Assembly (NCBI RefSeq): GCF_004010195.1
Contig: NC_057753.1
Location: 12,403,138-12,467,137 of the forward strand
Direction of reading: 5' to 3'
Length of the DNA stretch: 64,000 bases
Source of the DNA: Chiloscyllium plagiosum
Lineage: Eukaryota
Made by a program: the position numbers and the translations under genes. Every line of letters starts with the position of its first letter. Position 1 is the stretch's first letter. Below are positions 3,901-57,350 of the stretch, piece after piece. The notes under the pieces were generated by a model. The model ran no database searches, was not told the origin of the DNA, and saw only the letters and a program-made list of their open reading frames with translations.

Positions 3901-3989
3901 TTTTTTTTCAGAGTTGTCGTGAACGCATAGATTTGAAATGTCTGAGTCTATCTCAGCGAAGCTTTTAATTTTTTAAATAAACACTTGTA

Positions 3990-6033: not shown

Positions 6034-6563
6034 AACATTTATTTCTATTGCTTTATTCATTAAACATTTCCCTGTGGAATAAAGTTTTCGTTGCAATGCA
6101 GGTGGAACGTAGTATGAAATCGTTGCATGCCTCAAATGAAGTTGAAATGCCGAATCTCAACCGTTCAATGTATTCTACCTGGAAGGGGGGGGGGGGGGTG
6201 GGGCATATCTGTTTTCCTTAAGCAGTATTCAGTGAACTGTATTCAGCGTGGGAATTTCAATGAAGGAATTCCCAATACATAGATGGTAATGCGAATCTGA
6301 GATCAATATCGAAGATGAGAATTGGAGAAGGAGGAGGAGTGACCTTGCAGGCAATGTGAGCAACTTTCAGTGTGAGAGGCTTATTACAGAAACAAACGCC
6401 AAGACCCTCCTTCTTCTGCAATTTCAACAGGAAGGCAGCTCTGAGTTAGACATAAAGTGTGCATTATTCTGATTATTTACTCTTATAATTATAATACTTA
6501 CCTTCAGATCCACAACAGATCTCTGCAAACAATTTCTTTCACCACTTTTCTTATAATCTGAAA

Positions 6564-6934
6564 AAGTTGTGAACCTACAGAATCCTGCTGCTGTTTTCCG
6601 TTCTGCCCTCCACGGATCTGAATGGATAAGGTGACGTGCTGCATCTTCCTCCGTGGTGGTTGTTAGTGAATTGGAAATTGTGTCCATGAATTTCTCAATT
6701 TCCATCACATTTAAGATAGTGATTTGTTATAGACAGCTCCTGAATCATCCACCCCTGCATCTCGTGATGGTCAAATTTGAAGATGATCATACCACGAGGA
6801 TCACCACTCAATCAACAGAGATTACAAAGTTACTACCCTGACTGTGTAAGATGCCATATATACTGACACTGAACCTACCTCTCTGCAAATGAGAGCACAT
6901 CGTCACAAATAGGTGGTGAGTCCATACCAAATCC
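6564..6934 (+). pseudogene. Intronless leader-V TCR (alpha-type) pseudogene, copy 1
   Basis: Colinear with 13715-14048. ATG changed to AAG, with stops and frameshifts. RSS is CACATCG(6896-6902)-23-ACCAAATCC(6926-6934). Confidence 0.85.
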
Positions 6935-7990
6935 TGCACTGAGTGGGAGATCTGCTATGCTGATTTTGAATTATCAGTGTTACGAATTCTGTGCTCCAAA
7001 TTTCGAAATAAGTGAAATGAGAGAAAAATACACCAGAAAGTATGGAACAGCAAAGATTAAAGATCGTGAGAATGAAGACAATTAGATATGTCGATGGAGG
7101 TAAAGGAAGGGTATCTTTGCAAGCCAGATCATTGATGGGGAGAAAACAGAACTTAGGGAGATACAGTAATAACAGCTGCAGAGGACAGGATTGTGAGAAA
7201 TTGTTGATGAAAAAATGGAAGCAAGTGAAATATAACGAGCATGATGCAAAGGGACTAAAGATCAGGTGAAATGACAATTGGTGGAAAGTTGACAGAAATA
7301 TGGTGACCTTACTTTTAGCATGATCTTACCATCACTGAATTCCCCCATTGCCCACATTCTAGGTGTTTCCTTGATCAGAACCTCAATTAGACATACCACA
7401 TAAGTACAATGGCTACAAGAGCAGGTAAAAGGCGAGGAATACTTCCGTTTTAACGTTGCTTCTGACTAGCCGAAGCCTGCCCAACTTCTCCATAGCACAT
7501 GTCAGAAGTTTGATGGAGTGCTCCCTGCTTGTCTGGATTATTGCAGCCCCAACTCAAGGAACGAGCTTGACAACATCCAGAACGATGCAGACTGCTTGAT
7601 TGACACTACATCTACAAGTTTCCGCTGCCTTCACCTATGTGTACCATCTACAAGATACACAGTAGAAAGTTTCCAAAAATCCTCAGACAGCACCTTTGAA
7701 ACACATGGCCACTTCTGTCTAGACAACAGGGATAGCAGATATATTAGAACAACACTACCTTCGAGTTCCCCTCCAAGCTACTAACCAACCTGACTTGGAA
7801 ATATACCTCTTTTTCTTCACTGTCGCTGGATCAAAACACTGGAATTCCATCCCTCATGGCATTGTGTGTCAACCACCAACAGGTGCGATGCGCGGGTTCA
7901 AGAAGGCAGATAATTACCACCTTCCAAAATGCAAATGCGGATGGCAATAAATACTGAACAACCAGTGTAGCCACATCTCACAAATCAATA

Positions 7991-8649
7991 TGTTATGACA
8001 CGGGTAAACACCCCCCCTCAACCCTGTTAATTTTAAACTAGCAACACAGAGAAGATTTAGTCCGGAAAAAGTAACACATTTATTTATTGAAGTATAACAG
8101 AGAATAATAAACTAATAACTATTTGCAAGTCATATATTTACTTTCCCTTCTATAATAGTCCGATAAAACCCCTGAAAAAGGTTTACCAAAACTTAAATTT
8201 CAAAATCACGCAACTGTCGAATGCTCCCTATGTACCTTCCTATGTAGACTTTGTTCTTCTTCGAATTTGTATTTCACAGGTTGATAGATAAATGTAATTT
8301 TCAAATATCTAATTTTCCAGGCAGTCTGTTGACCTTGGTGGCTTGACAGTACTCTCTCAACTGTTCACATTTTCCCGATCTTGTACTCCCAAAGCTTCGG
8401 ATTGTGTCATTGGTTTTTAATATTGTCAATATACGAATTTCAGACATCATTGGAGTTTGGTTATTTGGGGGTATAATTTAAACTTATTTGCCTAATTCAA
8501 ATTATTTATTTGTCTCCAGGCAATCGGCGACACTAACTGCTGGGCCAAAAGGTTACATTGTATCTTGTTCAGGACATTTGATGCTGTCAGGTCGTTCTAC
8601 TAGCTGTCAATTTCGTAAGGGTATAGTATTCTTCTACATCTTCTTAACA
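7991..8649 (-). mobile_element. Solo LTR
   Basis: TGTT..AACA termini with a 4-bp TSD AATA (7987-7990 and 8650-8653). Absent at the equivalent site in the other duplicated units. Strand inferred from TTTATT on +. Confidence 0.75.
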
Positions 8650-10002
8650 AATAAAATTTAAACTATCAATGGTGCACAATATAAACAATGTATCCATATT
8701 GTGTGGTAGTAGGCCATTCGGCCCATAGAGACTCTGAAGAGCATCATACTCGAACGTACCCTCTCCCTGCATCTCCTCTGGCTAATTCACCAATCTGCCT
8801 AACTTTTAAATGTGGGTAGGTTCAAGAGCACCCGCTGGAAACCCATGCAGACATATGAAGACTGAGCAAACTCCACACAGAATGCCACCTGAAGTTGAAA
8901 TCGATCATGCATCTGTGGTGCTGCGAAGCAGCAGTACTAACCACTGAGCCTCAGTGCCATCTTCATACGAATTATTTCTGAAAATCCATGATTTGTTAAT
9001 GCGTCCCTCAAACATTGCTCATTTATGGGCGCCAGAGATTTTGTAGTGGTCTCGCCAACATTCTGTATCATCACAGACACTGAAAGTGTCTATAACGTGG
9101 TCTTCTTGTAGTCTCATAAAAACATTATCGCCACATGCGTTCCCATGTATTTTTGTGTCATCGAAAAACCTGGCAGTGGTACTTTCACTTCAATCAGGAT
9201 TTGGATGATGCATGGACGTTTCTGCTCTTACATTATTCCCATTCAGATGAGGGAGACTTGACTGCAATGTGTTCTTTTTCTTTCAAATATTCTGTAACCA
9301 TGTATGTGCGTGGCTGTCAATGCCAGCATCTACATCGCAGAGTCTGTGACAATGCCACTGTCAGCCATCGATTTGAAACGATGCAGTGCATCTGCTTTTC
9401 ATACAGGAGTTACATTTACAATGAGACTTAGCAAAGTTAAACAAATCCAGTTGCAATGGATATTCCCAGTAAATTCATCAAAAGCAACATTCGATCCTAC
9501 TGCTTCAATCATTAAAAAATTCCTTGTGGAATAACATGTTTGGATACAATGTGGGAGTAAAGTAGTCTGAAATCTTTGGATGCTGCAAAGGAAATTGAAA
9601 TGCAGACCCTGAACTAATTACAGTGTTCCACACGGATGTGGGACACATGTGTTTTCATTTATCATTATCCAGTGAAGTGGAACGATGTGAGATTTTGAAC
9701 ATTGCAATTAGTTGTATATGCCACTAGATGGTAGTGTGTTTCTGTGATCAAACTTGAAGATGAGGGCTGGAGGAGGAGTGACCTTCCCGACAGTGTGAGC
9801 AACTGTCAGTGTGAGAGGCTTGTTACAGAAACAATCGCCAAGACTTAGATTCTTCAGCAACTTCAACAGGAAAGTGGTTCTGAGTAAGATGAGAAGCGTG
9901 CATTATTCTCGTTATTTGCTCTTATAAAGACGATATTTATGTTCAGTTCCTCAACTGAGTTCTGTGGACAATCGTTTTCCTCACTGTTCTTGCAAGCTTT
10001 TG

Positions 10003-13714: not shown

Positions 13715-14048
13715 ATGTTCCAAAACTGCAGAGTCCTCCTGTTGTTTTCCACTCTGATCTCCACGGTGGTGATTGGAGAAGGTGAAGTGCTGCAACAACC
13801 TCTGTGGATGGTTGTTAGTGAAGTGGGAATTGTGTCCATGAATTGCTCCGTTGCCACTAAATTTAGCACAGTGCATTGGTACAGACAGCTGCCAAATCAG
13901 CCACCCCAGCATGTGATGATGGCCAAAAGAGAAGATGATCAGCCAGAGAGAATCGTCGCTTCAATCAGTGAAGATTACAAACTCAGTACCTTGACTGTGA
14001 AAGATGCCAGACTTAATGACACCGCCAACTACCTCTGTGCAGTGAAGG
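13715..14048 (+). CDS. TCR V segment (alpha-type), intact, leader and V in a single exon
   Basis: One ORF MFQNCRVLLLFSTLISTVVIG-EGEVLQQP..MNC..HWYRQLPNQPPQH..LTVKDARLNDTANYLCAVK with C23, W41 and C104. It is followed by RSS CACAGTG(14049-14055)-23-ACGAAAACG(14079-14087). Confidence 0.9.
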
Positions 14049-16386
14049 CACAGTGTCACAAACAGATGGAGCGCCCGTACGAAAACGTGCACAGAATGGG
14101 AGTTCTGCTATGCTGATTTTGAAGTATGTGTGTTAGTAACTGTGGGCATGAAAATCCAAAATAAGGAAAATGAAGGCAAAATATCAGGGTAAAAAATGAA
14201 CAGTAATTTTTAAACATTGTCATAAGTGATGACAATTGGATATGTGGAGGGAGGTAAAGGAAGGATGCACTTGCAACCGAGAAACATTAATGGAGAAAAG
14301 GGAAAGTGGAGATGTATATTAATAATACTTACAGAGGACAGAATGGTGATAACCTGTTGAAGAATAAATGGAAGAAATAGAAATATAACGATCATGATGC
14401 ACATTGATTAAAGATCAGGCTAAATTACTTTTGAAGGATACATGAAAATAACAGGGTGGTCTTTCTTTTAAGATGTTATCATCAACACTGAATCCTCAAC
14501 TCTCAACATGCCGGAAAATTCGTTGAGCAGAAATCCAACCGGGATTCACCAGAAAACACGTCAGAGGATAAAATATAGCTGTCTGTAAAGTTTCTCCGGA
14601 CTCCCCAAAGCCTGCCAATCTTCTAAAAGGCGCAAACTGGAGTGTTTTGGAATACACCCTACTTTTATCGTTGGGTGCAGCCCCCAAAATACTCAAGAAT
14701 CTTAATATCTTTCAGGATAAAGCAGCCCGCTTGATTGGTACTGCATCCACAAGCATATGCTGCCTCTACGATGACTTTCAGTTTGTGTTATCGATAAAAT
14801 TCACTGCAAAATATTACCAAAGAACTTCAGACAGCAACTTCAAAATGCAGGGCTACTTCCATCTCGAAGGATAAGGGACAGCTGCTTTTTGGGAGTACAC
14901 TCAACTTCCAGGGCACCTCAAAGCCATTCACCATGCTGACTTAGAAATATATTGGCGTTCCTTGACTGTCGCTTGTTCAAAACCTGGAAATTTCCTTCCT
15001 AATAATATTGTGGACGCAGGAGGTGGACTGGAGTGGTTCAAGAAGGTAACTTGACATCACTTTCTCAAGAGGAACGAGGGGCGGTGAATAAACACTAGCC
15101 GCCCAGCGACTCCCAGATTCCACAAAATGAATAAATAAAGACAACAATCAATCGTATGCAAACTTGAAAGCAGTTTGGAAGCAAACCATTCAGCCCACCA
15201 AGTCCATTCCGAACCTCTAAAGAACATCCCAGCCAATTCTAGTAACCCTGCACCTCCTATTGCTAATTCACGTATCCTACTCATCTTTCCACTGTGGGTG
15301 GAAACCCGAGCGCCCATAGGAAACCCACGCAGTGGCAGAGAGCATATGCAAACTCCACTCAGAGAATCACCTTAAGCTGAAATTGAGCATAGCTGTCTGG
15401 CAGTGTACCTCTGCTCTCTCACTATTCTCATCCAGATGAAGGAGACCATGCCACAATGTAATTTATTCCCGTTAACAACCCATTAGCCTTGTATGGGAGC
15501 CGCTGGTGTCCATCTCTAATAGTCTGAGACAAAGTGGCAGTAGACCATGTGTTTGATACGCTGCAGGGCATCTGATATCGATGCAGAAGCTACGCTGCCG
15601 ACGACACAAAGTAAAATTAAGCAAATTCAGTTGCAATGGATCATGTCAATAATGGCAACATTTGATGGTTATGTTGCGTTGATGGTAAATGTCGTTGCTT
15701 ATTTATTTTTTAAACGTCATTATTGCATCAAAATCCCTTAGATCCACCAGTCCTCTGCATCAGATGAAGCGGCTGCCAAAATCTGAAAGCAGCTTTGTTA
15801 ACTGGGGAGGTCCTTTTCTGATACTCGAACAGCATGAACTAATTTCCTTCTTTGGCTTTGCTTAGAGAAATAATAACCGTTTAGGGATAACATTTGGTTT
15901 AACCTCTGTCTAAAACCTAGTGTGTACTTGAACAAACCTACTTTGTAAACACAGACAAGAAACACGCACAGGCACAGATATGCCGTCACGAAATCACCAT
16001 CCATTTACATGTGCAGAGAATTCTGGCTCTGGCCAGCCATCTCGGAGTCAGTCCATGAAATGAGGAGACTCAAATTCTGCTTTTTATGTCTGGTGCCCAA
16101 GGTTGCCTCACTGGCCCAAGTTAACAACCCCAATGCAGGACCTCATAGGAAATGAGAGCCACCTCATTCTAAACCCGACAGATCATTAAACGAAAATAAG
16201 GAAGAACTGAGTTTGCTCGAAATCTTAAACAGAAACAGAAATAACTGGAAAAACTCAGCAGGTCTGGCAGCAACTGGGCAGAGAAACATTAGTTAACTTT
16301 TCGGCTCCAGTAACCCTTCATCAGAATGTTGATCTTTTCTCACATTATCCATGATATGAAGTGGAGTACAAAGGAACTTGAAGCTG

Positions 16387-16568: not shown

Positions 16569-17318
16569 ATGTCGCCTGGAACTCTGTGTTTACTGCTCAC
16601 AGCTGCAGCACTTCTCACTAGTAAGTTGAAAACTTGTCTATGCATGTGCTTCAGCCCTTTTTTGGGATTACATTTACTCAAATAGTTTTGGCAAAATAGA
16701 AGAAACAATCCTGTCTCCCAAGTATTTTGGGAGAAGTTAAAGAAAGTACACGAGTGAATGACAATTGAAGATTTAGGCTGGAAATCCAGACAGGACTGAA
16801 ATCATTGCGATGATTCAATAGAAGAGAGAGTTTTATATCCACCAATAGTTTTCAGTTTGCCCGTCAAGTTTCGGGAGATGAAGTGGAAAATGATGTCATC
16901 GCATGAAATGGATTCTAATTAAGCTTCCCTGATTTATTTCTCGGGTTATTGATTCAGGTGGATAAGAATATAATAGTGCCTTATTTAATTTTCTATAACT
17001 TCTGGCTCTTACAGGACTTTGTCGTGGCGATTCTGTCTCACAAACACCGGCTGCATTCACAGTGAATGAGGGGGATGATGTCCAGTTGTTCTGTAATTAC
17101 ACTACAATAGACAGCGATCCTAGCCTATTCTGGTACCGTCAACCTTCCAATGGGTTCATGGAGTTTCTGCTCCTGAAAAGCAAATATAGGGAAAAAACGG
17201 CGAATTTTCTCCGGGACCGGCTTTCCTCGGATTTTGATCATGGAAACCATACTATCCAGCTGAAAATCTTGAAAACAGAACTAACAGACTCCGCAATGTA
17301 TTACTGTGCACTGAGACC
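16569..17318 (+). CDS. TCR V segment (alpha/delta), intact; leader 16569-16620, V exon 17015-17318
   Basis: Leader MSPGTLCLLLTAAALLT with phase-1 GTAAGT donor. V exon RLCRGDSVSQTP..LFCNY..LFWYRQ..TDSAMYYCALR. RSS is CACGGAG(17319-17325)-22-ACAAAAACT(17348-17356). Confidence 0.92.
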
Positions 17319-19849
17319 CACGGAGACTCAGAGGTGGCTGACCCTGTACAAAAACTCTTAGAGCGTCACTGAACATAGGAGTGTATTAGGCAAACAGTAA
17401 GATCAGGAGTGTAACTGAACTGGTTTCCGATTTTACGGTGATATGTCATACTTATCATTTGGACACAAAGCGTTAATCATTGTAAACCTATCACTGAAAT
17501 AAACTAATGCAGTTAGTTTCGTGAATGTAAAACAAATAATTTATTTTGAATCTATCATGATGATCCAAAATGCTTCATTGTTCCAGCGATGAGGTTCTAT
17601 GGAAAGTTAAGCAATTAGTTCTGATTCCGCAAAATCCTCCAGTAATATTGAATTGCAGCATTCGTTTTCACAGACAATGACTTGTCACAGGTTTCCAACA
17701 CAAAAACACTGGAACAACCTGTACAACTTCAAACACATTTTGTGATATTGAGTACTGCCTCTGACCCTTCACGTTTACAAACCCAAAATGCGAAGTTATA
17801 GATTCACAGATCTTTTAAAATATCAAGAAGGAGTTCGGATGCAACTGGCATCTGAACAACACAAACCAATTGAAAACATTTCGTCGTGGCTGATTATTGA
17901 GTCAAAGCCATCAGTAAAGCAAATCAGTCGCTTCAGCCTTCTGCTGTTAAGCTGGACTGAAATGAACATTTTTCATCCTCTCTGTAAGTGTGTTGATTCT
18001 TTGTCAGCAATTCACATCTGGACATTTAAGTTGTCAAGACTAGCGGGTTCCTCTTCTCCCTCTGGCGGTAATTAAGAGAAAGAAAATCCTATTTTCATAG
18101 TCAGTCACAAAAGAGACATTCCTGACTCTGGGTGCTCGAATAAAGTGAAGTCTGTTTCTGCAGAAAATAGGATGCACGTGGTGCTCAGCATCTCTTAGGA
18201 GTTAGTTTATTCTGCACAGTCGGAATGAAACATTTGTTATCGAAATGGTGAAACCGATTGATCGGATCACACGTTAGATGGCATATTGCGAAGTGGGCAG
18301 CCATGTGGGTTTCATAGAGGCAGTTGCACAGATAGTTTCTGGGAGTGTTCAGTCTTTGTGTAAGTATTCCATTGCACAATGATACACTTCAGTGTCTTTC
18401 ATCTCAGTACTACCAACAGCAATAATGCTATGAACAAAAACAGAAGTTGCTGGAAAAGCTAAACAGGTCTCAGTGCGTCTCTGAAGAAAAATCAGTTACT
18501 GTTTCGGATCCTGCGATCCTTCCACAGAACTGGAAGAGGCACCAGACCAGAAACATTAACTCTGACATTTCTTCAAAGATTTTGCCAGACCTGCTGATCT
18601 TTTCCAGCAACATTGGCTTCTGTTCCTGATTTACAGCATCTGCAGTTCTTTCGGTTTTTATTTACCAACAATGTTATAACTTCTTGATAATTTAGTCAAG
18701 AGGTGAACTAGCAGTCATAATCAATCATAGAACCATATAGCACAAACACAGACCATTTGGCCCATCATGTCTGCGCTGACCAAGTGATGATGAAAATGTT
18801 CTTCGTAAATGCATAATGCTAAATCCTACTGCAGGTTCTCTCTCAAGTTCGTGCATTAAACTTTATTCATTGAAGTCATTTGGAATGCCAAACAAATATG
18901 AAGGCCATTACAAAACAAATATTTATAAAATACATGTTCATATACTTAATGACTGCAGTAGGTTTGTCTGCATTAAAGCAGAACATATTGGCAAAAGATT
19001 TACAAGGGCGTTGCTCAGTGAGAACCTGGAAAGCCGGGCCACAGAGTTTAAGGTAAACAATATTTAGATTTCATGTGCGTTTGAACGACTGCTTAAAGAG
19101 ACAACAGGATCTCATTAACCTGATTGTCCCAAATGCTGATTGTAGGAATATGCAGTATCAGATTTCCCAGTGACAATCACCTTCCAATCGGGTGCACAGC
19201 GTGAAACATTGAAACAGTTCATATTGTCGCCTTGGATGTCATTCTGAAGAAAGTGAAGTTATGATCATTTGATGTTGTCCAGCAGGCAAACTGAACGAAA
19301 GTACAAAGCAGTAGATACTGACAGAGGCCTGTTTTGAAGCATTGAGCTGCAGCGAATGTGCAGCACCAATAAAACGTGTTGTTCAACTCGTCTGATTCCA
19401 GAACCCTTGCTAGAAATTACCAGAAGATTCTCATTGAATTTATTCGAGGTCTTGACTTCAATAGACCTCGCACTAAGCATGAAAGAACATTTCACGAGAT
19501 TGGATGACAAAATGGAGGAAAGACTGTGACTGAAATAAGAGAAAGCTCCAGCAGGAAAAGAGGTGATCGTGAACCAAAGACATGAAGACAAATATGGTTT
19601 GTTTTACAGAAAAGGCTCAATCGAAGCATTGGCAGTTATTATCGTTGCTTTTCATTCGGGTGTTGCGAAGGTTACTGTTCCCACTTGTGATTCTGTTAAC
19701 ATCTCAACTCTGCAGTGAATATGTCAAAACTATGTCCTGAGTGAGCGATGCAACGGATAGCGCACCTGACTGCTAACCAGCACGACATTGGTGCCACTCC
19801 AGCTTGTCTCAGTGCATTTTACAATATGTCTAAACTGGTCTATATTTAA

Positions 19850-23573: not shown

Positions 23574-25876
23574 ACAACTGGTCTCCATCTGGCATATGCA
23601 GAGTTGCATGTGGAATATACTGAAAAATGATGCCCTTTGACTCGGATTTTCTGCGAACTTAGTGTGAGGTAAGTTGTCAATGAAATGTGCATCCTCATTA
23701 TTAGTGAGACAGGCCTGATTTAATTGCATGGATTCTCTGGACTCTGCCTGCATTAGTTTTCACCAGGCCCTGACTATTATTGTGCAATCGCTCGTCTCCA
23801 ACAGTTACAGAGGGTGTTCTGTCTTTGCTTGTATTTTAACTGCCCGTGGTGATATTGGCCCCATAATAATTTCAGGAAGTATTAACTGTATCAGAGTCTT
23901 ACAGGTTCCAATCAGTATTGAACCTATGCTTGCCTCCATGATTTGTCGGCATGAGTTTGCCCTTGCCAGTCAGGCCCTGATAAGTGTTTAACAATTCTCT
24001 ATCTCCTTAACTTTCAATTTAGCTTCGTTCTGTGTTGATGTTTCAACAAACCCTGCTTTTTGTTTAAATCAGAATAATCCATGCACCCACACCTTTGTGC
24101 ATTACAGACAGATGTCCTTGCATCGTATTGTATTCTTCAAGTAACAGATTCTATTTTCAATTGTCTGTATCTCTTTAATCGCCAGATTAACCTTATATGG
24201 TGCAAATATTGCGATGGCTCTTCATGTTCTGTATCTCGTCAGCATAATTCTATTCGTTTGGCCTCAATGATGATCACACAAGGTTCCATCTCACTTTCTG
24301 TTCATAGGATCACTGAGTCATAAAGTTATTGCAATATGGGATCACATAATTGCTTCCATTACATTATGTAAACTTACTGGTAATGTTAATACTATACCAG
24401 CCAGCGTCAATATTTATATATGACTTGACTTTGACACTCATTATATTACGTTAGATCTTCTCGATTTGACTTACTTTGGATCATTTCTCTGCCTGCATTC
24501 AACCATATGCTAATAAGTTTGTCTTGATGAAGTTAGATATGTTTTTGGAATAAATTGTCAACACTGTTTCGTGTTCATTCTGCACGTCTTTAGGTCACGC
24601 CCAGAAATTAAATTACCTATCAGTGTCACCCTAAAGAGTCGTGGTAGCCTGGGTATATTGAAAATAATTCACTTTATTGGCCAATTACGTCTGTCTATAA
24701 AATGATTGACACATGCTTATGACATCTCGGGGAGCGAATGCTGATGAAGATGTTGTTAATTCTTTTTTCACAGCACCCTGTCTATTTGGACACACATGCA
24801 TTTATTCAAAAAAGTTCCTTTCTTCGATACCCTCTCATGTCCTACACACGAACATGTTATGCAAAGTTCCTGCACCAAACTAAAGCATCGTACAAAGTGA
24901 AGGATGGCATAAATGTATTTCCTGTAATGCCCAGGTGTCAGCTGGGGCACGGATAAACTGACAGTTCTGTAAAATATGGTCACAGCAAATCTACTGCACT
25001 GTCATTCAGTGGATTTCTGATATTTTGGCATTGATTCTATTTTTTTCTCAAATATTGCTTAATGGCTTCGATGGGTTATTTTTTCATCAAATCATTCATA
25101 TTGCCATTGCAACGATGACTTATGTAATCGACGTGATTTATTCCTTTCATATGTTTTGTTTATGTAATTTGCATTTAATTCTGCGATGACTTGTCTGAAT
25201 TCCCTGAATTGCTGAATTCGATCATAAACACTGCTCTTTTAAGTGAAACAGATTAGCTTCAGACCAATAATGTGCCCTGCACAGTCAAGCTTGAACTTTG
25301 TCAAGTTCTAATTTTGAGGACCGCAATCAAAAGTAAACAATTCCATGATTCAAGGTGGTGGATATTTCAGTTTGTATATTGGTAATCCTCATAAGTATAA
25401 TTTGTATAATTTTGAAAATCAACAAAGCTGGAACGTATCAAGCAACAACAAGTTAGGTTTGGAACTGAGAAAATCTCCATCTGCACTGTCCTATCAGAAA
25501 CTGTTATGTACAATAGAGAATGAATCAAAATAAATCTCCCTTCTGAATTGTTCTTTTCCACAGTCAACATGGATTGATAAAGAACAAAATACATCTTTCA
25601 ATGTGCCGTCCCAAATAAAAGAGTTTGGGAACATGGAATAGGAAACAGCTACAGGAGACTGACTTCTGCAGCAAAGATGTCCAAAGAAGCTCCGATAAAA
25701 TACAGAGATATTTTATTCTGGTCTGGTCTGATTATGTATAAAATAATGAAAACAAAAACTAAACTCTCTATTGTAGCGAATTAGAATTCTTTAAATTAAT
25801 TTGAAAAGTTTTCCTTGCTTTGCTTTTAATTCAGCAGTCTGCTCTCTTATGATCACCTCAATCCTCAGGCCGGATA

Positions 25877-26279
25877 AGTTCTTGTACAGCCTCATACTCT
25901 TTTTGTTTCACTGTGTCTGACTGCACTGTAATAGACCGCGGTGTCTGACAGCTCAACTGTGTTAACAGCCAGAGTGGTGGAGCCTTTCTTACTGTCCACA
26001 GATACTTTAAACCTTCCTTCAATTCTTTCATCCCTGAAAGTTGAGACGAGGTACTCGGGAGCTTGTTTGGCGAGCTGTCTGTACCAGAACACAAAGTCAT
26101 TCGGGGAAATAGTAACGGTGTGTTGGAGTGAAATGTTTTGTCCGACTATTCCCTGATAAATAGATATCAGGACTGCTTCCGACTGGCAAGAAATAGCTGC
26201 AAAACATGATCAGAAGTGAACAAAATCAACTTAACGTTTCTTTAACGAGAACTAAATAAAGTGTCAGTGAAATAAGCAT
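25877..26279 (-). pseudogene. TCR V segment with open V exon (26196-25916) lacking both canonical Cys; leader splice apparently defective
   Basis: Reads ISCQSEAVLISIYQGIVGQNISLQ[H]TVTISPNDFVFWYRQLAKQAPEYLV..ELSDTAVYY[S]AVR. RSS is CACAGTG(25915-25909)-23-ACAAGAACT(25885-25877). Leader MLISLTLYLVLVKE starts at 26279 and has no phase-1 GT donor. Confidence 0.85.
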
Positions 26280-26575: not shown

Positions 26576-27003
26576 CTTACATCGCACAGTAATATATTCC
26601 GGCGTCCTCGACCACGATATAATCAATTGAGATGATGTTGAACGTCTTCGCTCGGTCTAAGGACAGCATGTACCGACCTTTAGTCTCATTGCCCTGGTAT
26701 ATGGACCCGATAAATGTCGGAGCCCCTATCAGTGTTTGTCTGTACCAGGCTACCGTTTCTGTTGAACTAACGGCCAGCTGACAGTCCAGTTTAACCTGCT
26801 CCCCTTCCTTTGAGACCACCTGATATACCTGTGAGATCTGATCCTCACACTGGGATGCTGTAATGGAAGAAATGTCAATCAAAAATCAAGAGGTATTATG
26901 GTATTGGTAAAACACGGTATCTGATTAGAAAAACAAACTCACAAAATATCAAGAACATCAGAGCACCAACTGGAAAAAGATCATTGCAGGTCTTTATGTT
27001 CAT
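26576..27003 (-). CDS. TCR V segment, near-intact; leader 27003-26943, V exon 26857-26576; terminal TAA just before the RSS
   Basis: Leader MNIKTCNDLFPVGALMFLIF with GTGAGT donor and an 85-nt intron. V exon SQCEDQISQ..KLDC..AWYRQ..EDAGIYYCAM*. RSS is CACAGTG(26575-26569)-23-ACAATATCT(26545-26537). Confidence 0.88.
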
Positions 27004-30830: not shown

Positions 30831-33378
30831 TCTATGCAGTTTACTTGTTATGTTTATGTTCGAAACTTCACTGTCAAACAAATATACATATTTCAGATTT
30901 TAATGTGCATCAATTCTTTAAATTAACACAATTTTCCTTCGTTGTTCCGATTATAGAACGTTCATCTCCTGGAAACAATTAAGCATCTTCTGTTACATAA
31001 CATACTTATCATTTGAAATATCTCAATTCCTTTAGCCTCCTTGTTGCAGTAAAAATCAACTCAGGAAAAAGTGAGGACTGCCGTTGTTGGGACATTAGAA
31101 TCGAGAATGTGGTGCTGCAAAAGCACAACAGGTCAGGCATCATCCGAGAAGCAGGAGAATCGACGTTTCAGGTATAAGCTCTTCATCAGGAGCTCTAAAA
31201 ACAAACTCAGCGTCTTTGTTCAGTTCCTACTACAAGCTAATACGTAGTATAGGTCCATTTTACGAACTCCAATGCCTTGTTATTCTTTCGAAAATGCAGT
31301 TACCTGAATTTTGAAAAGTGATGCAGTAAGGCTCAAAAATAATTACCATTAACACCAACAACATAAGTTTGAGTCAGATAAGTTCCAATCAAGGTTTTGG
31401 GGAAGGTACAATATTCTTGTTTTTGCTTGTAAAGGATTAAATCCCAACTCGATTAATGTCACCATTCTGAAGCAGATTGAATAGAACCCTCCAGTAGATC
31501 ACGCTCAACCAAAACAGGTGAATCATGAGTGAGACTGATATCCATTTTAAATAGTTGCTCTGAAACATGCTGGCGAACAACTCTTCAAAGTACGCTTTCT
31601 GTACTCCAACAAGATGTCTGACTACCTGAACACTGTTGTTTTTGTCGATCACTGCTCCAAGTACCTGCAGACACAAGTAACATCAGCTCTGTGAGCATCG
31701 CTTGACTGGAATCATTCCCTCATAGAAGATATAAAGGCCGTCCATGTAATGTCATCAGCGAAGCTAAAAGCAATCAGTCCTCCTCCTGTGTTAACATTTG
31801 AAGACATCTTTAGTTGAGGCAGAGAACAGATTTCAAACAGATATGAAAGAGAATTAACATAAGACCATTGTTTGCAATTCAGACGAAGATCACCATTTGG
31901 AAACGAGATGAAATCATTTATTTTTCCGAATCAGCTGTAAGGAATTGCACTGTGCACATCCCCTTCCAACCCCTCATCATCTTTTCGCGCTAAGTAATGG
32001 AAATATTCGAGGACTGCAGTGACTGTTGTTCAGTAAGAGATATGAGGTTGGAAGAAACACATTTTAAATCTATCCTGAAGAACGTTCTGTCGTACTACAG
32101 GATGCTGAAGGCTCACATTATTGTGTACAAGGTAATGGTTTGAAGCTTGTCTGTCAGGGACTAGCTCTCAATGAACAAGACCAACCCCAATCGCCATTAA
32201 TGCCTGCATAATGCTTATATTATCGAGATGGGCTTGTAGCAATTGTGCGGTCAATTTAGAGGTGAATATTATTTCATGATTATCATCAGAAAGCACTGAA
32301 CAGACATCGGAGAAAGCAATCAGAATTGCGGGGAGTCTGCTCTCGAGAGTGAAAATTTCAAATTTCTAACTTGTGAAATGTGCTCATTTTATGTAAATAT
32401 TCCTGAAGCAGATAATATGATCAAATAATCTCTGGATAGCAACTGCTTTCAACGGGATTGATAAACAGATAGTAGACAAGGCGAAAGAGATGCAAATAAA
32501 GTATACAGGTAAATAAATTTGAAAGAAGTCTAAATATAGATGAATCTTTTTCTGGACCAGACCATACCCCCGCAAATCATTTCAAAAATGCAGCCCAGAT
32601 CCTAACTTTTCTCGTTGTTTTCAGCAGCTGTAAGTGAATAATTCAGGTGTGAAGCAACTGGTCCAACCACTCATTTTTAAACAACATAGAATTTATTTGC
32701 AGACTACAGAATGAAACGCAAACAAAAGAGAACAGAATTGAGAGTATCTTAAACTATCTGAAAACCCAATGGACACTATTGTAACTTAATGATGCTATTT
32801 CAAATACTTGGAACATCCCCATAAATTTCCTCTTGGCAAAAAGAAAGTAAAATAAAACGGAAGTTCGTACAGAAGAGATGTCAAGACAAAGAGAAAAGAT
32901 CAGCATGAAGCTGTTTAGTTGACCAGCAGCCTCAAATTGATTGCTTGCTCAAACCAAACCAAACCAAACCAAAACCTGAAGTGGGAGAACTGGCCTACCG
33001 ACTTTTATTGCGCAAGTTTTTTTGTTGAAACAAAGTTTAAATGCCTTTTCAATGCGATGCTTTCAGAACAGTTCGAATCTCTGCCTTTACAACACGTCCA
33101 GCAAGAAATAAAAATAGGTCAACATAACCTCATCAACGAACAACATCTTCAGTGTACAACATCACAATTTATAAACTTCATTTTTGGGCGATTGCAAGCT
33201 AAATTTAAAAAGAAGTGTTGTGCTTTGTTTTCATATTTCGTGAATGATCCTGTGTCTAATGTTCTTGAGGCTGGATTATCGTTTTGGTTTATCGTTGTGA
33301 GAGCACCCTCAGCTGGACATAAATTGGAACTCTCAGGGTGGGTTTTTGTTCAGGGACGACGATATCTGCAGCAGTGTG

Positions 33379-33811
33379 GGCTCCATGGCACAGAAATACA
33401 CGACGCTATCGGTGAGAAGAACTGGAGAGACTTGTAAAGAAAACGTCTTGCTTTGCCTGTTCAAAACAGCAGAGAATCTGTCTTGAAAATCTTTAGACAT
33501 TTCTACCTTCCCCGTGCTGTATATTTTCACGAAATATCTCGGTTCATCCCCAGGATACTGAATGTACCAGAAGGCAGCTTTGAAAGAAGATGTCGAGTAG
33601 CTGCAGTTCAATGTTATATTCTCTTGCTCCAGGACCATTAATTCGTGTGGATCTTGGAAAACCTCATCTTCGCCATTAGTCCCTGCAAAAAAGGAAAATA
33701 TATCAAATGTCTCGGAGGGAACATCACTCGTGTTGGAGATACTGAACACTTAAACATAGACTTACCACGCAGCACCACCAATATTATTAGTAAGGTGTAC
33801 GGGAGGAACAT
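33379..33811 (-). CDS. TCR V segment (alpha-type), intact; leader 33811-33766, V exon 33682-33379
   Basis: Leader MFLPYTLLIILVVLR with GTAAGT donor and an 83-nt intron. V exon GTNGEDEVFQDP..ITLNCSY..AFWYIQYPG..TDSVVYFCAME. RSS is CACACTG(33378-33372)-22-ACAAAAACC(33349-33341). Confidence 0.93.
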
Positions 33812-50790: not shown

Positions 50791-52493
50791 AATTTAAGAT
50801 TTTCCTGTCATGTTCAAAATCTGTTCATAGTGTCCAAGAAGCTCATTCATGTTCCAACATTCTATGTTTCTGCAGTGCATTGTGTAGATTCTGTTACTGA
50901 GTATGTATGACACAGGGAGAGAAGTTTTGTGGAGGCATTGCTCATCCAGTTGACTCCATTTTACTGAATGACATCGAATTTCTCAGTTATTTTTTCAGAA
51001 GATCAGCCACCATCATATGAAATGGCACAGCAGGCTCGAGGATGCAACACACTTCTGTGTTTCTAACTTTTACGTTCGCGCATGACCAACGATGAGATAC
51101 TGTGAGGCTGAAAAAAAAATAGTTTGAACAGGTTGGATCACTTTTCTCCAGAAGACTTGGAACCAGGAGGTGACTAAACAGGAATGCTTTCAATGATGCC
51201 CTGGTTAAGTGAAATGAATTCAGAAAAGCGTTCTTATTCCGTGACAAAGAGCTATCAATAAATGTTTCACTAACAGACTGAACGGAGATATTAAGACAAA
51301 TGCATTCATGCAACGGCAAAATAGAAATACAAGCCCTCATACAAGCAGTAGATGGAACAGGGAACCTAAAGAATGTAGAACGAAATATACGGTTGCATGC
51401 TTCCAACTGTTAGTATATCATTCTGTGTAAAGAGGAGAGAGGTTGATTTGATGTACATACACTGGCGAGGTCAAATAAGGCAAATGCCCTGCGCCTACTC
51501 TGAAGGTTGTGTATAATATAAACTTCAGAGCCAAGGTAGGCCCGGAGAAGGCGGGAGAGAATCAAACAATTAATTGGAGGGAAATTGAGATGGTCATATA
51601 TGCTGAAGAGGAATCTCCCACGAAGTAACAATACAACTGCAGGTGAACCTACAAAAACTTAAACCAACTGACAACTAAGAGACATTCAAACGAAGCTCCC
51701 ACAATGTCACAAGCCACAAACAGAACAAAATAATTGTGAAAATAAAAATAAGAATACTGTGAAAATTCGAAGTAATTTGAAATTGATAATATCGAGATTC
51801 CTTATGGCCAACAATAGATAAGAAAATGGACCAGTAGAACATTACATAACGTATTGATATGTCAAAACTTTTGATCTTTGACAGTCAGTGTTCAATTTAA
51901 ATGAATTTATACTTTTGGTTAGATGTTCATGTGAGCATTGATAGACCCCAAGTGCGTGCATCTCACAAACATTCTTTTTTCAAATTACGTGGACCACTCA
52001 TATCTGAATGCGTATTTGGAATCATGTTTCTTAAGAAAAGTTTATTAAAAAAAGTAATATCATGAAATCAGACAACACAGAAGAATGTTACTCGATATGC
52101 ATGCCAATCCCGACCCATAAAGATGGAAACCAATTAGTGCACAAACATTTGCTGTTTCCCAATAGTCCACCACATACTTCCTGTCCCAGTAATAACCCAA
52201 TTAGAATAGACGAGTTTTTGACGAATCTGATCATGTTATTCACCTCTTGTGAAAATAACACGCCATCTTCTTTACTGATTGATTTTCGATTAACAGTCTG
52301 TCAAGATGTAACAATTTATGTAAGACGCTGGTTTGCATAAATCTCGATTTATTCCCGTGGATATGATGTTTCCTCTGGTGCATTACCAAACAATAAATAT
52401 GATTTAATCTATCAGGTTCTGGATAGAAACAATCCTGCTCAACCCCACCCCAACCCCGAGTGCAGCGTCCAGCTCCTCAAGCCTCTGTCAACA

Positions 52494-52761
52494 TGATTTT
52501 GTGCAGCTCTCTTTGTGCTCTGTGATGCTGGGTATATGTAACCGCAACATATTCAGGTCCTTGTGCAGGTCTCTCCGTGCTCTTTTTCACTGTGTCGCTA
52601 ATTTCCAAGATGAGAAACATTTTTTTCAAAGCTTTCACCGTGCTGTGTATCACTCCATGTTGTTATCTGAGAGCTCTCAGTGATCTGTAAACTCGATGTG
52701 TAATTCCCAGCGTGTTCAGGTTTTTGTGCAGCTCTCTCCGTACTGCATATAACTGTCTGTG
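52494..52761 (-). repeat. Tandem array of four homologous 23-RSS copies downstream of the supporting V-delta
   Basis: + strand nonamer-spacer-heptamer: TGATTTTGT gcagctctctttgtgctctgtga TGCTGGG (52494-52532); GGTCCTTGT gcaggtctctccgtgctcttttt CACTGTG (52556-52594); ATTTTTTTC aaagctttcaccgtgctgtgtat CACTCCA (52619-52657); GGTTTTTGT gcagctctctccgtactgcatat AACTGTC+TGTG (52719-52761). Confidence 0.75.
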
Positions 52762-53086
52762 CTGAGCGCCGACTCAGTATATAATAATACACAGAGGAGT
52801 CATTTGCTTGTTTTTGTGAGATCATTGAGATTTTCACTGCAGGATCAATGGAAGCAGAAATTCATATGCCTGCACGATTTTCATTCGTCTGCTCTCCTGA
52901 CGTGAGTCTTTGAATTACGTGTTTGGGGGCTGACAGTACAAGTAAACTGTGTACGGACAGATCCCTGAATAATTACAGCTTAAAGTAACGGTGTAACCGG
53001 CAGGAGATATTTGTAGGGGTGGACCCCGAGAAACCAGGGAACAGGAACATTTAGGATGACATTCAGCATCATCACTCATTCATCCT
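52762..53086 (-). pseudogene. Leaderless NAR-TCR supporting V-delta (STCRDV) pseudogene
   Basis: AG acceptor at 53088-53087 with no leader exon nearby and a short N-terminal linker. Reads SPAGYTVTLSCNYSGICPYTVYLYCQ (extra CDR1 Cys) ..ISASIDPAVKIS..NDSSVYYYILSRRS. It has stops, frameshifts and C104Y. Confidence 0.85.
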
Positions 53087-53269
53087 CTGTTGAAAGGAGC
53101 AAATGCAAAATACAGGATTTTTTTCTGTTCATTTTGTTGATGTTATATTTTAATATGTTCTGTCTTGTTTAAATATAAACTAACGAGGTTATGAGGTGAC
53201 GTTTTGTTTTACGTATCTTCCTCTTGTGATGTGCAATACATTGTCAAAACAGGTCTTGAAAACTGATTC

Positions 53270-53470
53270 AACAGTAATGTTTAAATGTGTTATCGACATG
53301 TCAAAACCCTTTGATGAGAATGATGTTGAAGCGTTCATTATTCCATTGGAATAACTGGCTAGGCAGATGGAATGGTCCCAGAGTTTATGGGTAATGCTCT
53401 TTCAGACCAAACTGGCAGGCAGAGCTCGTGAGACAACTGCAGCGCTGTCAGATGAGGGGTCAAGAGTCTA
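53270..53470 (+). mobile_element. Gypsy-type gag fragment
   Basis: KPFDENDVEAFII..LARQMEWSQSLWVMLFQTKLAGRARE. Confidence 0.65.
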
Positions 53471-55365
53471 TGAAGACAAAGAATCCAAGGACAAAGAAAA
53501 TTTACAGCCTAGGAACAGGCCTTTCCACCCTCCAAGCCAAGCCGATCCAAATGTACTGTCTAAACCTGAAGGTGAATTCCTAAAAATTTGTATCCCTCTG
53601 TTCCCCACCTACTCATGCATCTGTCCAGTCGCATCTTAAATGAATCTACCGTGCCTGCCTCTACCACTTCTGCTGGCAACGTGTTCCAAACACCCACCAC
53701 CCTTTCTGTGAAGTACTTGCCGCGTGTATCCCCCTTAAACTTTCCACCTCTCACCTTGAACGCGTGACCTCTCGTTATTGAATCCTTCACCCTGGGAAAA
53801 CGCTTGTCCATCCTGTCGATACCCTTCATGATTTTGTAATCTTCAATCAGGTCCCTCCTCAATCTAATTTTTTTCTAATGAAAATAAACCTAACCTCTCT
53901 TCATAGCTAGCACTTTCCATACCAGGGCAACATCCTCGTCAACCTTCTCTGCACCCTCTCCAAAGCGTCCACATTCGTTCGTAATGTGGAGACCAGAACT
54001 ATACACAATATTCTAAATGCGGCCGAATCAATATATTATACAATTCTAACATGACTTACCAGCCCTTTTACTCAACATCCCGTCCAATGAAGGCAAGCAT
54101 ACTATATGCCTTCTTGACCACTCTATCCACCTGTGCAGCAACCTTCAGGGTACAATGGACCTGCACTCCCAGATCTCTCTGCCCATCAACTTTTCCCAAG
54201 GCTCTTCCATTCATTGCATAATTCGCTCTAGAATTAGTCTTGCCTAAATTCATCACATTTGTCTGGATTGAACGCCATCTGCAACTTTTCTGCCCAACTC
54301 TCCAGCCTATCTGTCTCCTCCTGTATTCTCTGACAGTCCCTTATGCTTTCTGCTACTTCTGAAATCTTCGTGTCATCTGCAAACTTGCTGATCATACCAA
54401 GAGTGCCCTCTTCCAGATCATTTATGTATATTACAAACAACAGTGGCCCCAACACTGACCCCTGTGGAACACCACTGGTCACTTTTCTACATTTCGAGAA
54501 ACTCCCTTCAATTACTACTCTCTGCCTCCTGTTGCTCAACCAGTTCTTTATCCACCTAGCTAGAACACCCTGCACACCATGTGACTTAACTTTCTCCATT
54601 AGTCTACCACGGGGAACCTTATCAAACGCCTTAATAAAGTCCATGTATATGACATTAACGGCCGTTCGTTCATCCATCAACTTGGTCACTTCCTCGAAGA
54701 ACTCTATTAATTTGGTAATGCACGATGTACCCACACAAAACCTTGTTGCCTGTCACTGATTAGCCCATTCTTTTCTAAATATAAATAGATCCTATCCCTC
54801 ACTATCCTCTCCAGTAACTTTCCCACCACCGACGTCAGGCTCATTGGTCTAGTTACCCGGAATATGCCAACTCTCATTCTTGTACAAGGAGATAGCATGA
54901 TCAACCTTCCAGTCCTCCAGCACCTCACCTGTATTTCAGGATGCCGCAAAGATATCTGTCAGGGCCCCAGCTACTTCCTCTCTCGCCTCCCTCAGCAACC
55001 TGCGATAGATCCCTTCCGGTTCTGGGGATTTGTCTACTTTGATAACCTCTAGCCGACCCAACACATCTTCCGTGCTTATGTCAACGTGATCCAGACTAAT
55101 AAAACCTTTATCTCTAATCTCAAGACTCATTATGTTCCTCTTCTCAGTGAACACTGATGCAAAGTAACCATTCCGAATCTCACCCATTCTCTCAGGTTCG
55201 GCACACAGCCTTCCTTCATTATCCTTTAGTGGACTAATCCTTTCTCTCGTTACCCGCTTGCTTCTTATATAATAATAAAATGCTTTGGAATTCTCCTTAA
55301 TTATGATTGCTAAAGCTATTTCATAACCCTTTGAGCCCGCTTGATTCCTTGTTTAAGACTTCGTT
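53471..55365 (-). mobile_element. CR1 LINE (5'-truncated, ORF2 RT) inside the NAR-TCR J to V-delta intron
   Basis: YMDFIKAFDKVP..SGVPQGSVLGPLLFVIYINDL..KFADDTK and RRDLIEDYKIMKGIDR. Confidence 0.92.
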
Positions 55366-56039: not shown

Positions 56040-56128
56040 CAGTTTCGACAGTCACGGCCGTTCCTGATCCATCTACTTAATCATAATGACACAATCATGC
56101 TCCTCTCAACCTCCAATGTACAAGAACC
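56040..56128 (-). other. NAR-TCR J segment (56089-56040) with 23-RSS
   Basis: Minus strand: GGTTCTTGT(56128-56120)-23-GATTGTG(56096-56090), then HYD*VDGSGTAVTVET and a phase-1 GTAAGT donor. DGxGT is IgNAR-J-like rather than the TCR FGxG. Confidence 0.85.
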
Positions 56129-56822: not shown

Positions 56823-57350
56823 GAGTCTTGGAGCGATGGGAAGCCGAGGCCCATCAGTGTGTATGCCGGACCAGTATCGAGCTTTACCGCAATTGGTGGC
56901 GGTGTCTTCAGCTCTGATATCCCAAGTGTACAACGAAAATGTATTTTTTACTTTATTCATGGACACAACACATCTCCCACCGCTTGTGATCCGCTCCCAT
57001 TCTGTTGCTGCCCGTGTTTGACGAAAGAATTGTTCACTCTCAAAATAATGATAAGAATTACGACTTTTAAAACATAGTTGATGGTGAGAGACTGGCACTC
57101 CTTTCTATTCACCACTACTCTGCTCTGCGTCACGGACTGACTGAAATAAGCTGGAATTTAAACAGAGAGAAGTGAGTGGATATTAGACCTGATATACACA
57201 ACATGGTTAAAACTGCAGACTCTGCTGGAATGCGGGCGAAATCGATAGCAGTGAAGTTTTAATTTCACGCAAAGTTGGTTTCTGTGATCGATACTCACAG
57301 GGTAAACAGACACACAGGATCAAACGAAGAAGTATGCCCGCGTTCCCGTG
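56823..57350 (-). pseudogene. NAR-TCR V pseudogene 2 (V exon 57150-56862; leader about 57350-57299)
   Basis: Reads YFSQSVTQS /frameshift/ VVVNRKECQSLTINY /frameshift/ SYHYFESEQFFRQTRAATEWERITSGGRCVVSMNKVKNTFSLYTWDIRAEDTATNCGKARYWSGI. RSS is CACACTG(56861-56855)-23-CCAAGACTC. Leader GILLRLILCVCLP has a GTGAGT donor but no ATG. Confidence 0.88.

What the first reader, a model, noticed from the sequence alone, without database searches (positions are those of the whole stretch)
52494..52761. Four tandem 23-RSS copies behind one NAR-TCR supporting V-delta: a possible multi-cut-site coding end
Seen: the supporting V is followed by four homologous nonamer-23 spacer-heptamer units at intervals of 62, 63 and 100 bp, and the spacers share an agctctctccgtrct-like core. 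The V-proximal heptamer is broken by an apparent 4-nt ACAG duplication (CACAGACAGTT). The third copy from the V reads a perfect CACAGTG-23-ACAAGGACC. The V reading frame stays open for about 54 codons through the first two copies and stops 3 nt before that perfect heptamer (ORF 52598-52837). Established: V segments normally carry a single RSS. Inference: serial RSSs could act as backup cut sites, as decoys tuning usage of the doubly rearranging NAR-TCR, or add a long germline extension to CDR3. Caveats: this V is a pseudogene, and the long open frame depends on the 4-nt duplication.
Basis: partly seen in the sequence, partly recalled or inferred. Interest (0 to 1): 0.8.

Follow-up and report, generated by a model that had tools for sequence, protein, structure and literature searches.

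The report
Repeated recombination signals behind shark V
Behind a dead shark T-cell-receptor V gene lie four worn copies of its recombination signal, a repeat that intact relatives in other sharks also seem to carry, so it belongs to the gene family rather than being a one-off accident, though no use of the extra copies has been shown.

Summary
The repeat is real. Four homologous units (RSS plus a ~23-nt flank, period 62-63 nt, one interval 100) follow a minus-strand NAR-TCR supporting V-delta pseudogene. Contigs of another run of the same species confirm it, and 7 other V-type RSSs in the window lack anything like it.

The description is only partly right. Only unit 3 (52594-52556) is a canonical 23-RSS. 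The "ACAG duplication" in unit 1 is better read as substitutions (CACAGTG to GACAGTT), because the window keeps the frame of five related shark models across that site.

The array is not private to this pseudogene. Three gene models or ORFs with intact V domains read on into two to five RSS-like units: whale shark, epaulette shark and an unnamed ENA contig. This is inferred from peptides, because no DNA of other sharks could be fetched.

Six unchecked first-reader notes report similar arrays elsewhere in this genome, so the scan found this before on other DNA.

No use of distal signals is shown: 3 of 3 rearranged cDNA-like sequences join at the V-proximal site.

Verdict: an inert relic here of a family-wide tandem-RSS array whose role is open.

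The parts
52762..53058 (-). NAR-TCR supporting V-delta, a pseudogene. FR1-FR2 is in one frame (53046-52930) and FR2-FR3 in another (52930-52762). It has one in-frame stop (GI*IS), a 2-aa gap in FR3, the FR2 Trp replaced (YLYCQ) and the second Cys replaced (YYY).
   Evidence: tblastn of P0009, P0014, P0004, P0018, P0021, P0012, P0019 and P0002 against the window, E 1e-17 to 4e-27. Three-frame translation. The fragments alone do not reach Pfam V-set.
52719..52757 (-). Unit 1, the V's own RSS: GACAGTT - 23 - ACAAAAACC. The CACAG just upstream (52761-52757) belongs to the V coding end (...SRRSA-).
   Evidence: Sequence. Same frame as five related models across this site.
52658..52718 (-). 3' flank of unit 1 (TGAACACGCTGGGAATTACACAT) plus about 37 extra nt. 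These hold a 12-nt palindrome (within the 14-nt self-complementary hit 52667-52680) and stretch this interval to 100 nt.
   Evidence: The window has about 13 residues that whale-shark P0009 lacks here. Contigs of the related species stop matching at 52674.
52618..52657 (-). Unit 2, decayed. In register it reads TGGAGTG - 24 - AAAAAAATG.
   Evidence: 27/43 to unit 1.
52556..52594 (-). Unit 3: CACAGTG - 23 - ACAAGGACC. It is the only canonical-looking 23-RSS, and its nonamer has GG inside the A-tract.
   Evidence: 30/43 to unit 1. It aligns with the P0001 tail in two different frames.
52494..52532 (-). Unit 4, decayed. In register it reads CCCAGCA - 23 - ACAAAATCA. A second heptamer-like CACAGAG (52524-52518) leaves a 15-nt spacer. 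This is the same 'double heptamer' layout as unit 3 of P0001 and unit 2 of P0009.
52598..52837 (-). Mechanical ORF (79 aa) running from FR3 through units 1-2, with its stop TAG at 52600-52598.
   Evidence: Shuffle test P = 0.028. No homologue by word search.
54237..54734 (-). Context: reverse-transcriptase ORF of a retroelement inserted in the intron between the NAR J and the supporting V.
   Evidence: Pfam RVT_1, E 2.9e-20.
56874..57148 (-). Context: NAR-TCR V exon of the same cassette, also broken (stops, and the Cys motif altered to ...TATNCGKARY).
   Evidence: tblastn with P0018, P0021, P0019 and P0009.

Best explanation
The stretch is the worn remnant of a tandem repeat whose unit is the V gene's own 23-RSS plus about 23 nt of 3' flank (period about 62 nt).

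Such a repeat most simply arises by tandem duplication and then grows or shrinks by unequal crossing-over. It seems to be inherited by the whole NAR-TCR supporting V-delta family, because intact family members in other sharks appear to carry 2-5 units.

In this window the cassette is dead: NAR V and supporting V are both broken and a retroelement sits in the intron. The array is decaying along with it:
- Unit 1 lost heptamer position 1.
- Units 2 and 4 lost CAC.
- Only unit 3 still looks like a 23-RSS, with a weakened nonamer.
The array most likely does nothing here.

In intact cassettes each good unit would be a possible RAG cut site. This is inferred from the established sequence requirements of an RSS, which I recall and did not read here. 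Whether distal units are cut, and whether that is selected, is not shown.

Shown: the repeat, its specificity to this V within the window, the pseudogene state, and the frame conservation. Inferred: arrays in other species (from peptides), and the origin by duplication.
For: - Four-unit family.
- Homology covers the 3' flank as well as the RSS, as expected of a duplication unit.
- 7 of 7 other V-type RSSs in the window are single.
- Confirmed in contigs of another run.
- Pseudogene features and RVT_1 in the intron.
- Relatives: phmmer over 1.84 billion representatives gave 16 hits, and the word search gave 26.
- Of 21 germline-type supporting-V models or ORFs, only 3 stay colinear for 40 aa or more past YYC. 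All 3 show two or more RSS-like units: P0001 has 5, P0009 has 2 plus the start of a third, P0014 has 2.
- The strict codon-compatibility scan found 10 sites in 39 proteins (12,690 aa). Eight lie in such tails.
- The P0001 tail aligns with window unit 3 in two different frames, which only DNA-level homology explains.
- The V-set domains of P0001, P0009 and P0014 end before the tails.
Against: - Unit counts elsewhere rest on peptides and on a best-case codon choice.
- 12 of the 21 models stop at or just after the first heptamer, and 2 stop soon after RSS 1, so they say nothing about further units.
- 4 models (P0022, P0025, P0026, P0028) have long tails with no RSS-like unit. They may be spliced or interrupted by an insertion, but they could also mean no array.
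- Contigs of the related species match the V and unit 1 and then stop matching at 52674. The array is therefore not stably conserved even between close species.
- In intact genes 6 of 7 downstream units look compatible with CAC and a 22-23-nt spacer, against 1 of 3 in this pseudogene. That hints at maintenance, which a purely neutral repeat does not predict.
Confidence: 0.6

Rival explanations
1. The arrays are a selected, working part of intact NAR-TCR cassettes. RAG can cut at several nested 23-RSSs. A cut at a distal unit leaves proximal units in the coding end, so the same supporting V can rearrange again to a further D or J. This would be a retry device for a V tied to one already rearranged NAR V. 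Alternatively the extra signals raise or damp RAG capture. The window copy would be a dead example.
For: - Arrays appear behind intact V domains in at least two orectolobiform species, and in a contig whose V is closest to the Mustelus models.
- By the best-case codon reading, all five units of P0001 keep a 7/7 heptamer, an 8-9/9 nonamer and a 23-nt spacer.
- Heptamers are better kept in intact genes (6 of 7 downstream units) than in this pseudogene (1 of 3).
- The spacer core is shared from a sawfish model (P0002) to sharks.
Against: - 0 of 3 rearranged cDNA-like sequences show use of a distal unit.
- 10 of 21 germline models have TGA in the V frame right at the first heptamer, so an open frame is not general.
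- Flanks are about as conserved as the RSS itself, as slow neutral evolution or homogenisation would give.
- In P0001 a block of units is repeated (units 1-2 resemble units 4-5), which looks like recent repeat expansion.
- The numbers are far too small for a test of selection.
Confidence: 0.25
2. A private, neutral local duplication that arose in this pseudogene only.
For: - The units are degenerate (45-64% alike) and lie behind a dead gene.
- TRF sees nothing.
Against: - The same layout appears in other species behind intact V domains.
- The window's order (unit 1, double-heptamer unit, CACAGTGA unit) parallels whale-shark P0009.
- Six unchecked notes report arrays at other loci of this genome.
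Confidence: 0.07
3. Unit 3 (52594-52556) is the working RSS of this V and replaces the broken proximal one, so this locus still rearranges.
For: Perfect heptamer and a 23-nt spacer. Run X9 of the related species has a contig that joins V-end-like sequence directly to unit-3-like RSS sequence (joint 52595 to 52752). This is probably a paralogue.
Against: - The nonamer has GG inside the A-tract.
- The V has a stop, a frameshift and no second Cys.
- The retained coding end would carry TAG 3 nt from the cut.
- The RNA run gave 5 poor reads and no joint.
Confidence: 0.05
4. An assembly artefact, or an interspersed repeat (a transposon carrying RSS-like ends).
For: None specific. High-copy repeats do lie nearby, with depth in the thousands from about 53316.
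Against: - Contigs of another run span the array.
- No other copy lies in the 64 kb.
- Only one weak inverted-repeat pair was found.
- Unit 1 is the V's own RSS.
Confidence: 0.02

Closest known systems
Ordinary single 23-RSS of TCR alpha/delta V segments
   Same: Heptamer, 23-nt spacer and nonamer lie directly 3' of the V coding end. Unit 1 sits exactly where rearranged relatives join (P0012, P0017, P0019).
   Different: Here the signal and its flank are repeated head to tail, four times in the window and up to five in a relative. The 7 other V-type RSSs in the window are single.
NAR-TCR (doubly rearranging TCR delta of cartilaginous fish; Criscitiello et al. 2006)
   Same: The layout is the same: leader, NAR V, D/J signals, intron, then a leaderless supporting V-delta. 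The passages I read in PMC1845163 say the associated TcR-delta V lacks a leader and has a conserved Cys in CDR1. The window shows ...NYSGICPY.
   Different: This copy is a fossil. I found no mention of repeated RSSs in the papers I could search, but the primary papers were not held.
Extra or cryptic recombination signals used for secondary rearrangement (VH-replacement heptamer in FR3; intronic RS and kappa-deleting element). Recalled, not read here.
   Same: More than one RAG target is associated with one gene segment, which allows a second cut after a first join.
   Different: Those are single, often heptamer-only sites at other positions. They are not tandem full copies of the V's own RSS, and no use is shown here.
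Minisatellite-type tandem repeats evolving by unequal crossing-over
   Same: Head-to-tail units of about 62 nt. Unit number varies between loci and species, and P0001 shows block duplication (units 1-2 resemble units 4-5).
   Different: The unit is a functional signal of V(D)J recombination, and it stays attached to one V family across species.

Membership tests
Canonical 23-RSS | Heptamer beginning CAC (consensus CACAGTG) directly at the coding end | tested here: not met
   In the 23-nt register: unit 1 GACAGTT, unit 2 TGGAGTG, unit 4 CCCAGCA. Only unit 3 is CACAGTG, so 1 of 4 meets it. The requirement for CAC is recalled knowledge.
Canonical 23-RSS | Spacer of 23 +/- 1 nt | tested here: inconclusive
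   Units 1 and 3 have 23 nt. Units 2 and 4 have 24 and 23 nt only with decayed heptamers. With the CAC-bearing heptamers the spacers are 14 and 15 nt.
Canonical 23-RSS | A-rich nonamer (consensus ACAAAAACC) | tested here: met
   Unit 1: 9/9. Unit 2: 6/9. Unit 3: 7/9 (GG inside the A-tract). Unit 4: 7/9.
Canonical 23-RSS | Cut by RAG and joined under the 12/23 rule | not testable with these tools
   The one RNA run laid gave 5 poor reads. DNA runs are kept as contigs, which drop rare joints.
NAR-TCR supporting V-delta | V domain homologous to known supporting V-deltas | tested here: met
   tblastn E 1e-17 to 4e-27 against NAR-TCR models of Rhincodon, Hemiscyllium, Chiloscyllium, Stegostoma and Pristis. 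The best phmmer hits are two-V models.
NAR-TCR supporting V-delta | Leaderless V exon downstream of a NAR V-D-J unit on the same strand | tested here: met
   NAR V at 57148-56874, 12- and 23-type signals at 56462 and 56128-56090, J-like sequence with a GTAAGT donor near 56040, and the supporting V at 53058-52762, all on the minus strand.
NAR-TCR supporting V-delta | Intact reading frame, canonical Cys/Trp/Cys, CDR1 Cys | tested here: not met
   Frameshift near 52930, one stop, Trp and the second Cys replaced. The CDR1 Cys is present (SGICPY). It is a pseudogene member.
Tandem repeat | Head-to-tail units of constant period with homology across the whole unit | tested here: met
   Spacing 62/63/100. 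Homology covers the RSS and the 23-nt flank. The 100-nt interval is explained by about 37 extra nt. Identity of 45-64% is below TRF's reach.

The most novel reading that the evidence does not exclude
Tandem arrays of intact 23-RSSs are an old, maintained feature of the NAR-TCR supporting V-delta family across shark orders. They give RAG several nested cut sites on one V. A distal-first cut keeps proximal signals inside the coding end, so the same V can rearrange again. That would be a built-in retry, or a way to adjust length, for a V that cannot be swapped because it is spliced to one particular, already rearranged NAR V.
Probability: 0.15. Interest if true: 0.85.

Novelty: new variant of a known kind. 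Interest (0 to 1): 0.58.

Why it matters
V segments are taken to carry one recombination signal, and signal quality and number are known levers on segment usage. A V family that carries its signal as a tandem array in several shark lineages would be a natural experiment on three points: how RAG chooses among adjacent identical targets, whether secondary rearrangement of the same V is possible, and how the two rearrangements of the doubly rearranging NAR-TCR are coordinated.

The window copy itself is a dead relic. Its value is as a pointer to the family trait and as a neutral-decay reference against which intact arrays can be compared.

Tried and rejected
- TRF on 52000-53200 found no array.
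- Word search with the 79-aa ORF found nothing, and with the P0001 tail alone only itself.
- Self-BLAST found no paralogue of this V or array in the window.
- Two pattern scans of metagenome contigs for the spacer-nonamer core gave 0 and 3 stretches. The 3 (L001-L003) are unrelated chance matches with no heptamer or V context.
- The RNA run X15 gave 5 reads under 90% likeness and no information.
- The search of earlier findings by sequence was blank.
- Rejected: D segments, because there is no oppositely oriented signal between units.
- Rejected: a transposon, because there is no other copy and only one weak inverted-repeat pair.
- Rejected: a selected open reading frame. The shuffle P is 0.028 in one of three frames, and 10 of 21 relatives stop at the first heptamer.
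- Literature: searches turned up no accessible paper describing repeated RSSs behind the supporting V.
- I read passages only of PMC1845163, PMC12227049, PMC6795676 and PMC10322711. All other papers I saw only as search listings.
- Criscitiello 2006 (PMC1458790), Ott 2021 (PMC7909615) and Deiss 2019 (PMC7039070) are not held, and supplements are closed. A prior description there cannot be excluded.

Full report
WHAT IS THERE

The V lies on the minus strand. Reading that strand, the V end (...DSSVYYYILSRRSA) is followed by four units that share the spacer core AGyACGGAGAGAGCT, a nonamer-like A-run and about 23 nt of 3' flank (TGAAyAyGyTGsG..TTACAyAT).

The repeat finder gives a 4-copy family at 52505, 52567, 52630 and 52730 with spacing 62/63/100. 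MAFFT aligns the four units almost without gaps at 45-64% pairwise identity. That is too low for TRF, which reports nothing there. Self-BLAST finds the units only here in the 64 kb.

IS IT MORE THAN CHANCE, AND IS IT REAL DNA?

The unit-1 RSS has three further copies within 600 nt (30/43, 27/43, 27/43). At most 1 of 500 mononucleotide shuffles reaches each score. Seven other V-type RSSs in the window have no second copy (best 17-19 of 38-39, P 0.62-1.0). Five of those seven sit beside V segments verified by tblastn.

Logan contigs of another run of the same species span the array: a 710-nt contig over 52032-52742 with 9 other letters and 1 gap, and a 452-nt contig over 52713-53166. No 4-nt indel is listed.

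CORRECTIONS TO THE DESCRIPTION

(a) Only unit 3 (52594-52556, CACAGTG-23-ACAAGGACC) passes a simple RSS scan.

They give CACAGCA-14-AAAAAAATG and CACAGAG-15-ACAAAATCA. In register with units 1 and 3 the heptamers are TGGAGTG and CCCAGCA.

(c) The "ACAG duplication" does not hold up. tblastn aligns the window in one unbroken frame from FR3 across the V end. With whale-shark P0009 it runs on through RSS 1: SRRSAQTVICSTERAAQKPEHAGNY against SRRSAHTVIQSTERVTQKPEHGG. P0014 and P0004 also run through RSS 1; P0018 and P0021 end a few residues after the heptamer. A 4-nt insertion would shift the frame. The in-register heptamer is therefore GACAGTT (52757-52751) with a 23-nt spacer and a perfect nonamer, and the CACAG before it is the V coding end. 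The open frame does not depend on any duplication.

(d) The 100-nt interval reflects about 37 extra nt, including a 12-nt palindrome within 52667-52680, which P0009 lacks.

(e) The frame after YYY stays open for 60 codons, and 2.8% of shuffles do as well.

THE GENE

tblastn with NAR-TCR models shows a whole cassette on the minus strand. The NAR V lies at 57148-56874 and the supporting V at 53058-52762. D/J-type signals and a J with a splice donor lie between them.

Both V exons are broken. The supporting V has a frameshift near 52930, one stop, a 2-aa gap, and has lost the FR2 Trp and the second Cys. An RVT_1 reverse-transcriptase ORF sits in the intron. I built no spliced model of the window cassette and searched its pieces separately.

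RELATIVES

phmmer with the 54-aa FR1-FR2 piece against 1.84 billion representatives gave 16 hits with E up to 0.001. A word search with P0012 gave 26. The 39 proteins break down as follows:
- 21 germline-type supporting-V models or ORFs.
- 4 models spliced on to J or C.
- 3 rearranged cDNA-like NAR-TCR delta chains.
- 7 conventional V cDNA-like chains.
- 4 unrelated proteins.

Of the 21 germline-type models:
- 12 stop at or just after the first heptamer. In 10 of these the tail ends 8 residues after YYC, typically ...TAQ, as CACAGTGA would give.
- 2 end shortly after RSS 1.
- 4 have long tails with no RSS-like text (P0022, P0025, P0026, P0028). They may be spliced or carry an insertion.
- 3 stay colinear for 46-109 residues, and all 3 read into further RSS-like units.

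The three informative ones are:
- P0009: XP_048475041, Rhincodon typus.
- P0014: XP_060678048, Hemiscyllium ocellatum.
- P0001: an unnamed 1007-bp ENA contig whose V is closest to the Mustelus models.

A scan asked whether any synonymous codons could spell CACAGTG, then 22-24 nt, then at least 8/9 of ACAAAAACC. It found 10 sites in 12,690 residues, 8 of them in these tails: P0001 five, and P0009, P0014 and P0002 one each.

P0001's inferred unit spacings are 61, 69, 53 and 61 nt. Its third unit and P0009's second have two heptamers 8 nt apart, giving 23- and 15-nt spacers. That is the layout of window units 2 and 4.

The P0001 tail aligns with window unit 3 in two different reading frames: ISDTVTQNTERTVQKPE with ISDTVKKSTERPAQGPE, and LQTQWYRTRRELFKNLNMVR with LATQ*KRARRDLHKDLNMLR, E 8e-4. 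Only homology at the DNA level explains that. Pfam places the V-set domains before these tails.

All of this is read from peptides.

RELATED SPECIES AND READS

Contigs of a related species (runs X9 and X11) match 52674-53236 and 52674-52843. Both stop matching at 52674 although they continue for 200-1000 nt. The orthologue therefore has the V and unit 1 but differs beyond that point, so the array is structurally unstable between close species. The RNA run gave nothing usable.

Six first-reader notes report tandem RSS arrays behind supporting V-deltas elsewhere in this genome. I could not open those windows, so they remain untested leads.

USE OF THE UNITS

The three rearranged cDNA-like chains join at the V-proximal site with ordinary CDR3s:
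- P0012: CALSRRS-DIYE...
- P0017: CALGRRAAAIF...
- P0019: CARIWRSAH-PKKK...

So 0 of 3 contain unit peptide. This is a very small sample. Products of distal cuts may be out of frame and lost.

READING

Most likely (about 0.6) the window holds an inert, decaying copy of a family-wide tandem-RSS repeat that arose by duplication of RSS plus flank and is carried along with the cassette. Block repetition in P0001 (units 1-2 resemble units 4-5) suggests continuing unequal exchange.

A working role in intact cassettes is open (about 0.25), as several nested RAG cut sites serving as retries, tuning or decoys. Intact genes seem to keep CAC and a 22-23-nt spacer in 6 of 7 downstream units, against 1 of 3 in this pseudogene. 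The counts are tiny and codon-optimistic, and flanks are about as conserved as the signals.

A private duplication (0.07), an active unit 3 in this locus (0.05) and an artefact (0.02) are unlikely.

LITERATURE

Eight searches found no accessible paper on repeated RSSs behind the supporting V. The three most relevant primary papers are not held and supplements are closed, so novelty is provisional. Statements about which RSS positions matter and about the 12/23 rule are recalled textbook knowledge and were not read here.

VERDICT

I rate it a new variant of a known kind, with interest 0.58.

Noticed in passing
window 53500-55300 (minus strand); RT ORF 54237-54734: A retroelement with an RVT_1 reverse-transcriptase ORF (E 2.9e-20) is inserted in the intron between the NAR J and the supporting V. 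It is one more sign that the cassette is dead.
   Followed up: partly
window 53316-53400: Summed contig depth jumps to 3,400-9,000 in all three DNA runs, with many loose ends at 53310, 53356 and 53398. This marks a very high-copy interspersed repeat shared by both species.
   Followed up: no
window 52667-52680: A 12-nt palindrome (TGAGAGCTCTCA) sits inside the roughly 37 extra nt between units 1 and 2. Contigs of the related species stop matching exactly here (52674).
   Followed up: partly
P0022 and P0028 (NCBI models, Heterodontus and Cetorhinus): These models continue right after ...TAQ into unrelated sequence, as if spliced from a GT inside the V's heptamer. They may reflect germline transcripts that use the heptamer as a splice donor.
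   Followed up: no
P0002, P0003, P0006-P0008, P0011, P0014, P0022, P0023, P0025, P0026, P0028 (FR2 of the supporting V, ...CQYTVHWYRQSPGQAP...): The conserved FR2 text YTV(H)WY..QAP is codon-compatible with a heptamer - 23 - nonamer-like site (7/7 and 7-8/9) inside the V body. It may be only an effect of codon freedom.
   Followed up: no
window 13733-14050 (+), 17011-17337 (+), 25874-26167 (-), 26580-26882 (-), 33366-33707 (-): Five conventional TCR V segments, each with a single 22-23-nt-spacer RSS. Two more RSS-like sites (6896, 10336) share the spacer type of the V at 14049 and may mark V pseudogenes.
   Followed up: partly
window 52441-52460: A short C-rich run (CCAACCCCACCCCAACCCC on the + strand) lies just past the last unit. 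It was not examined.
   Followed up: no
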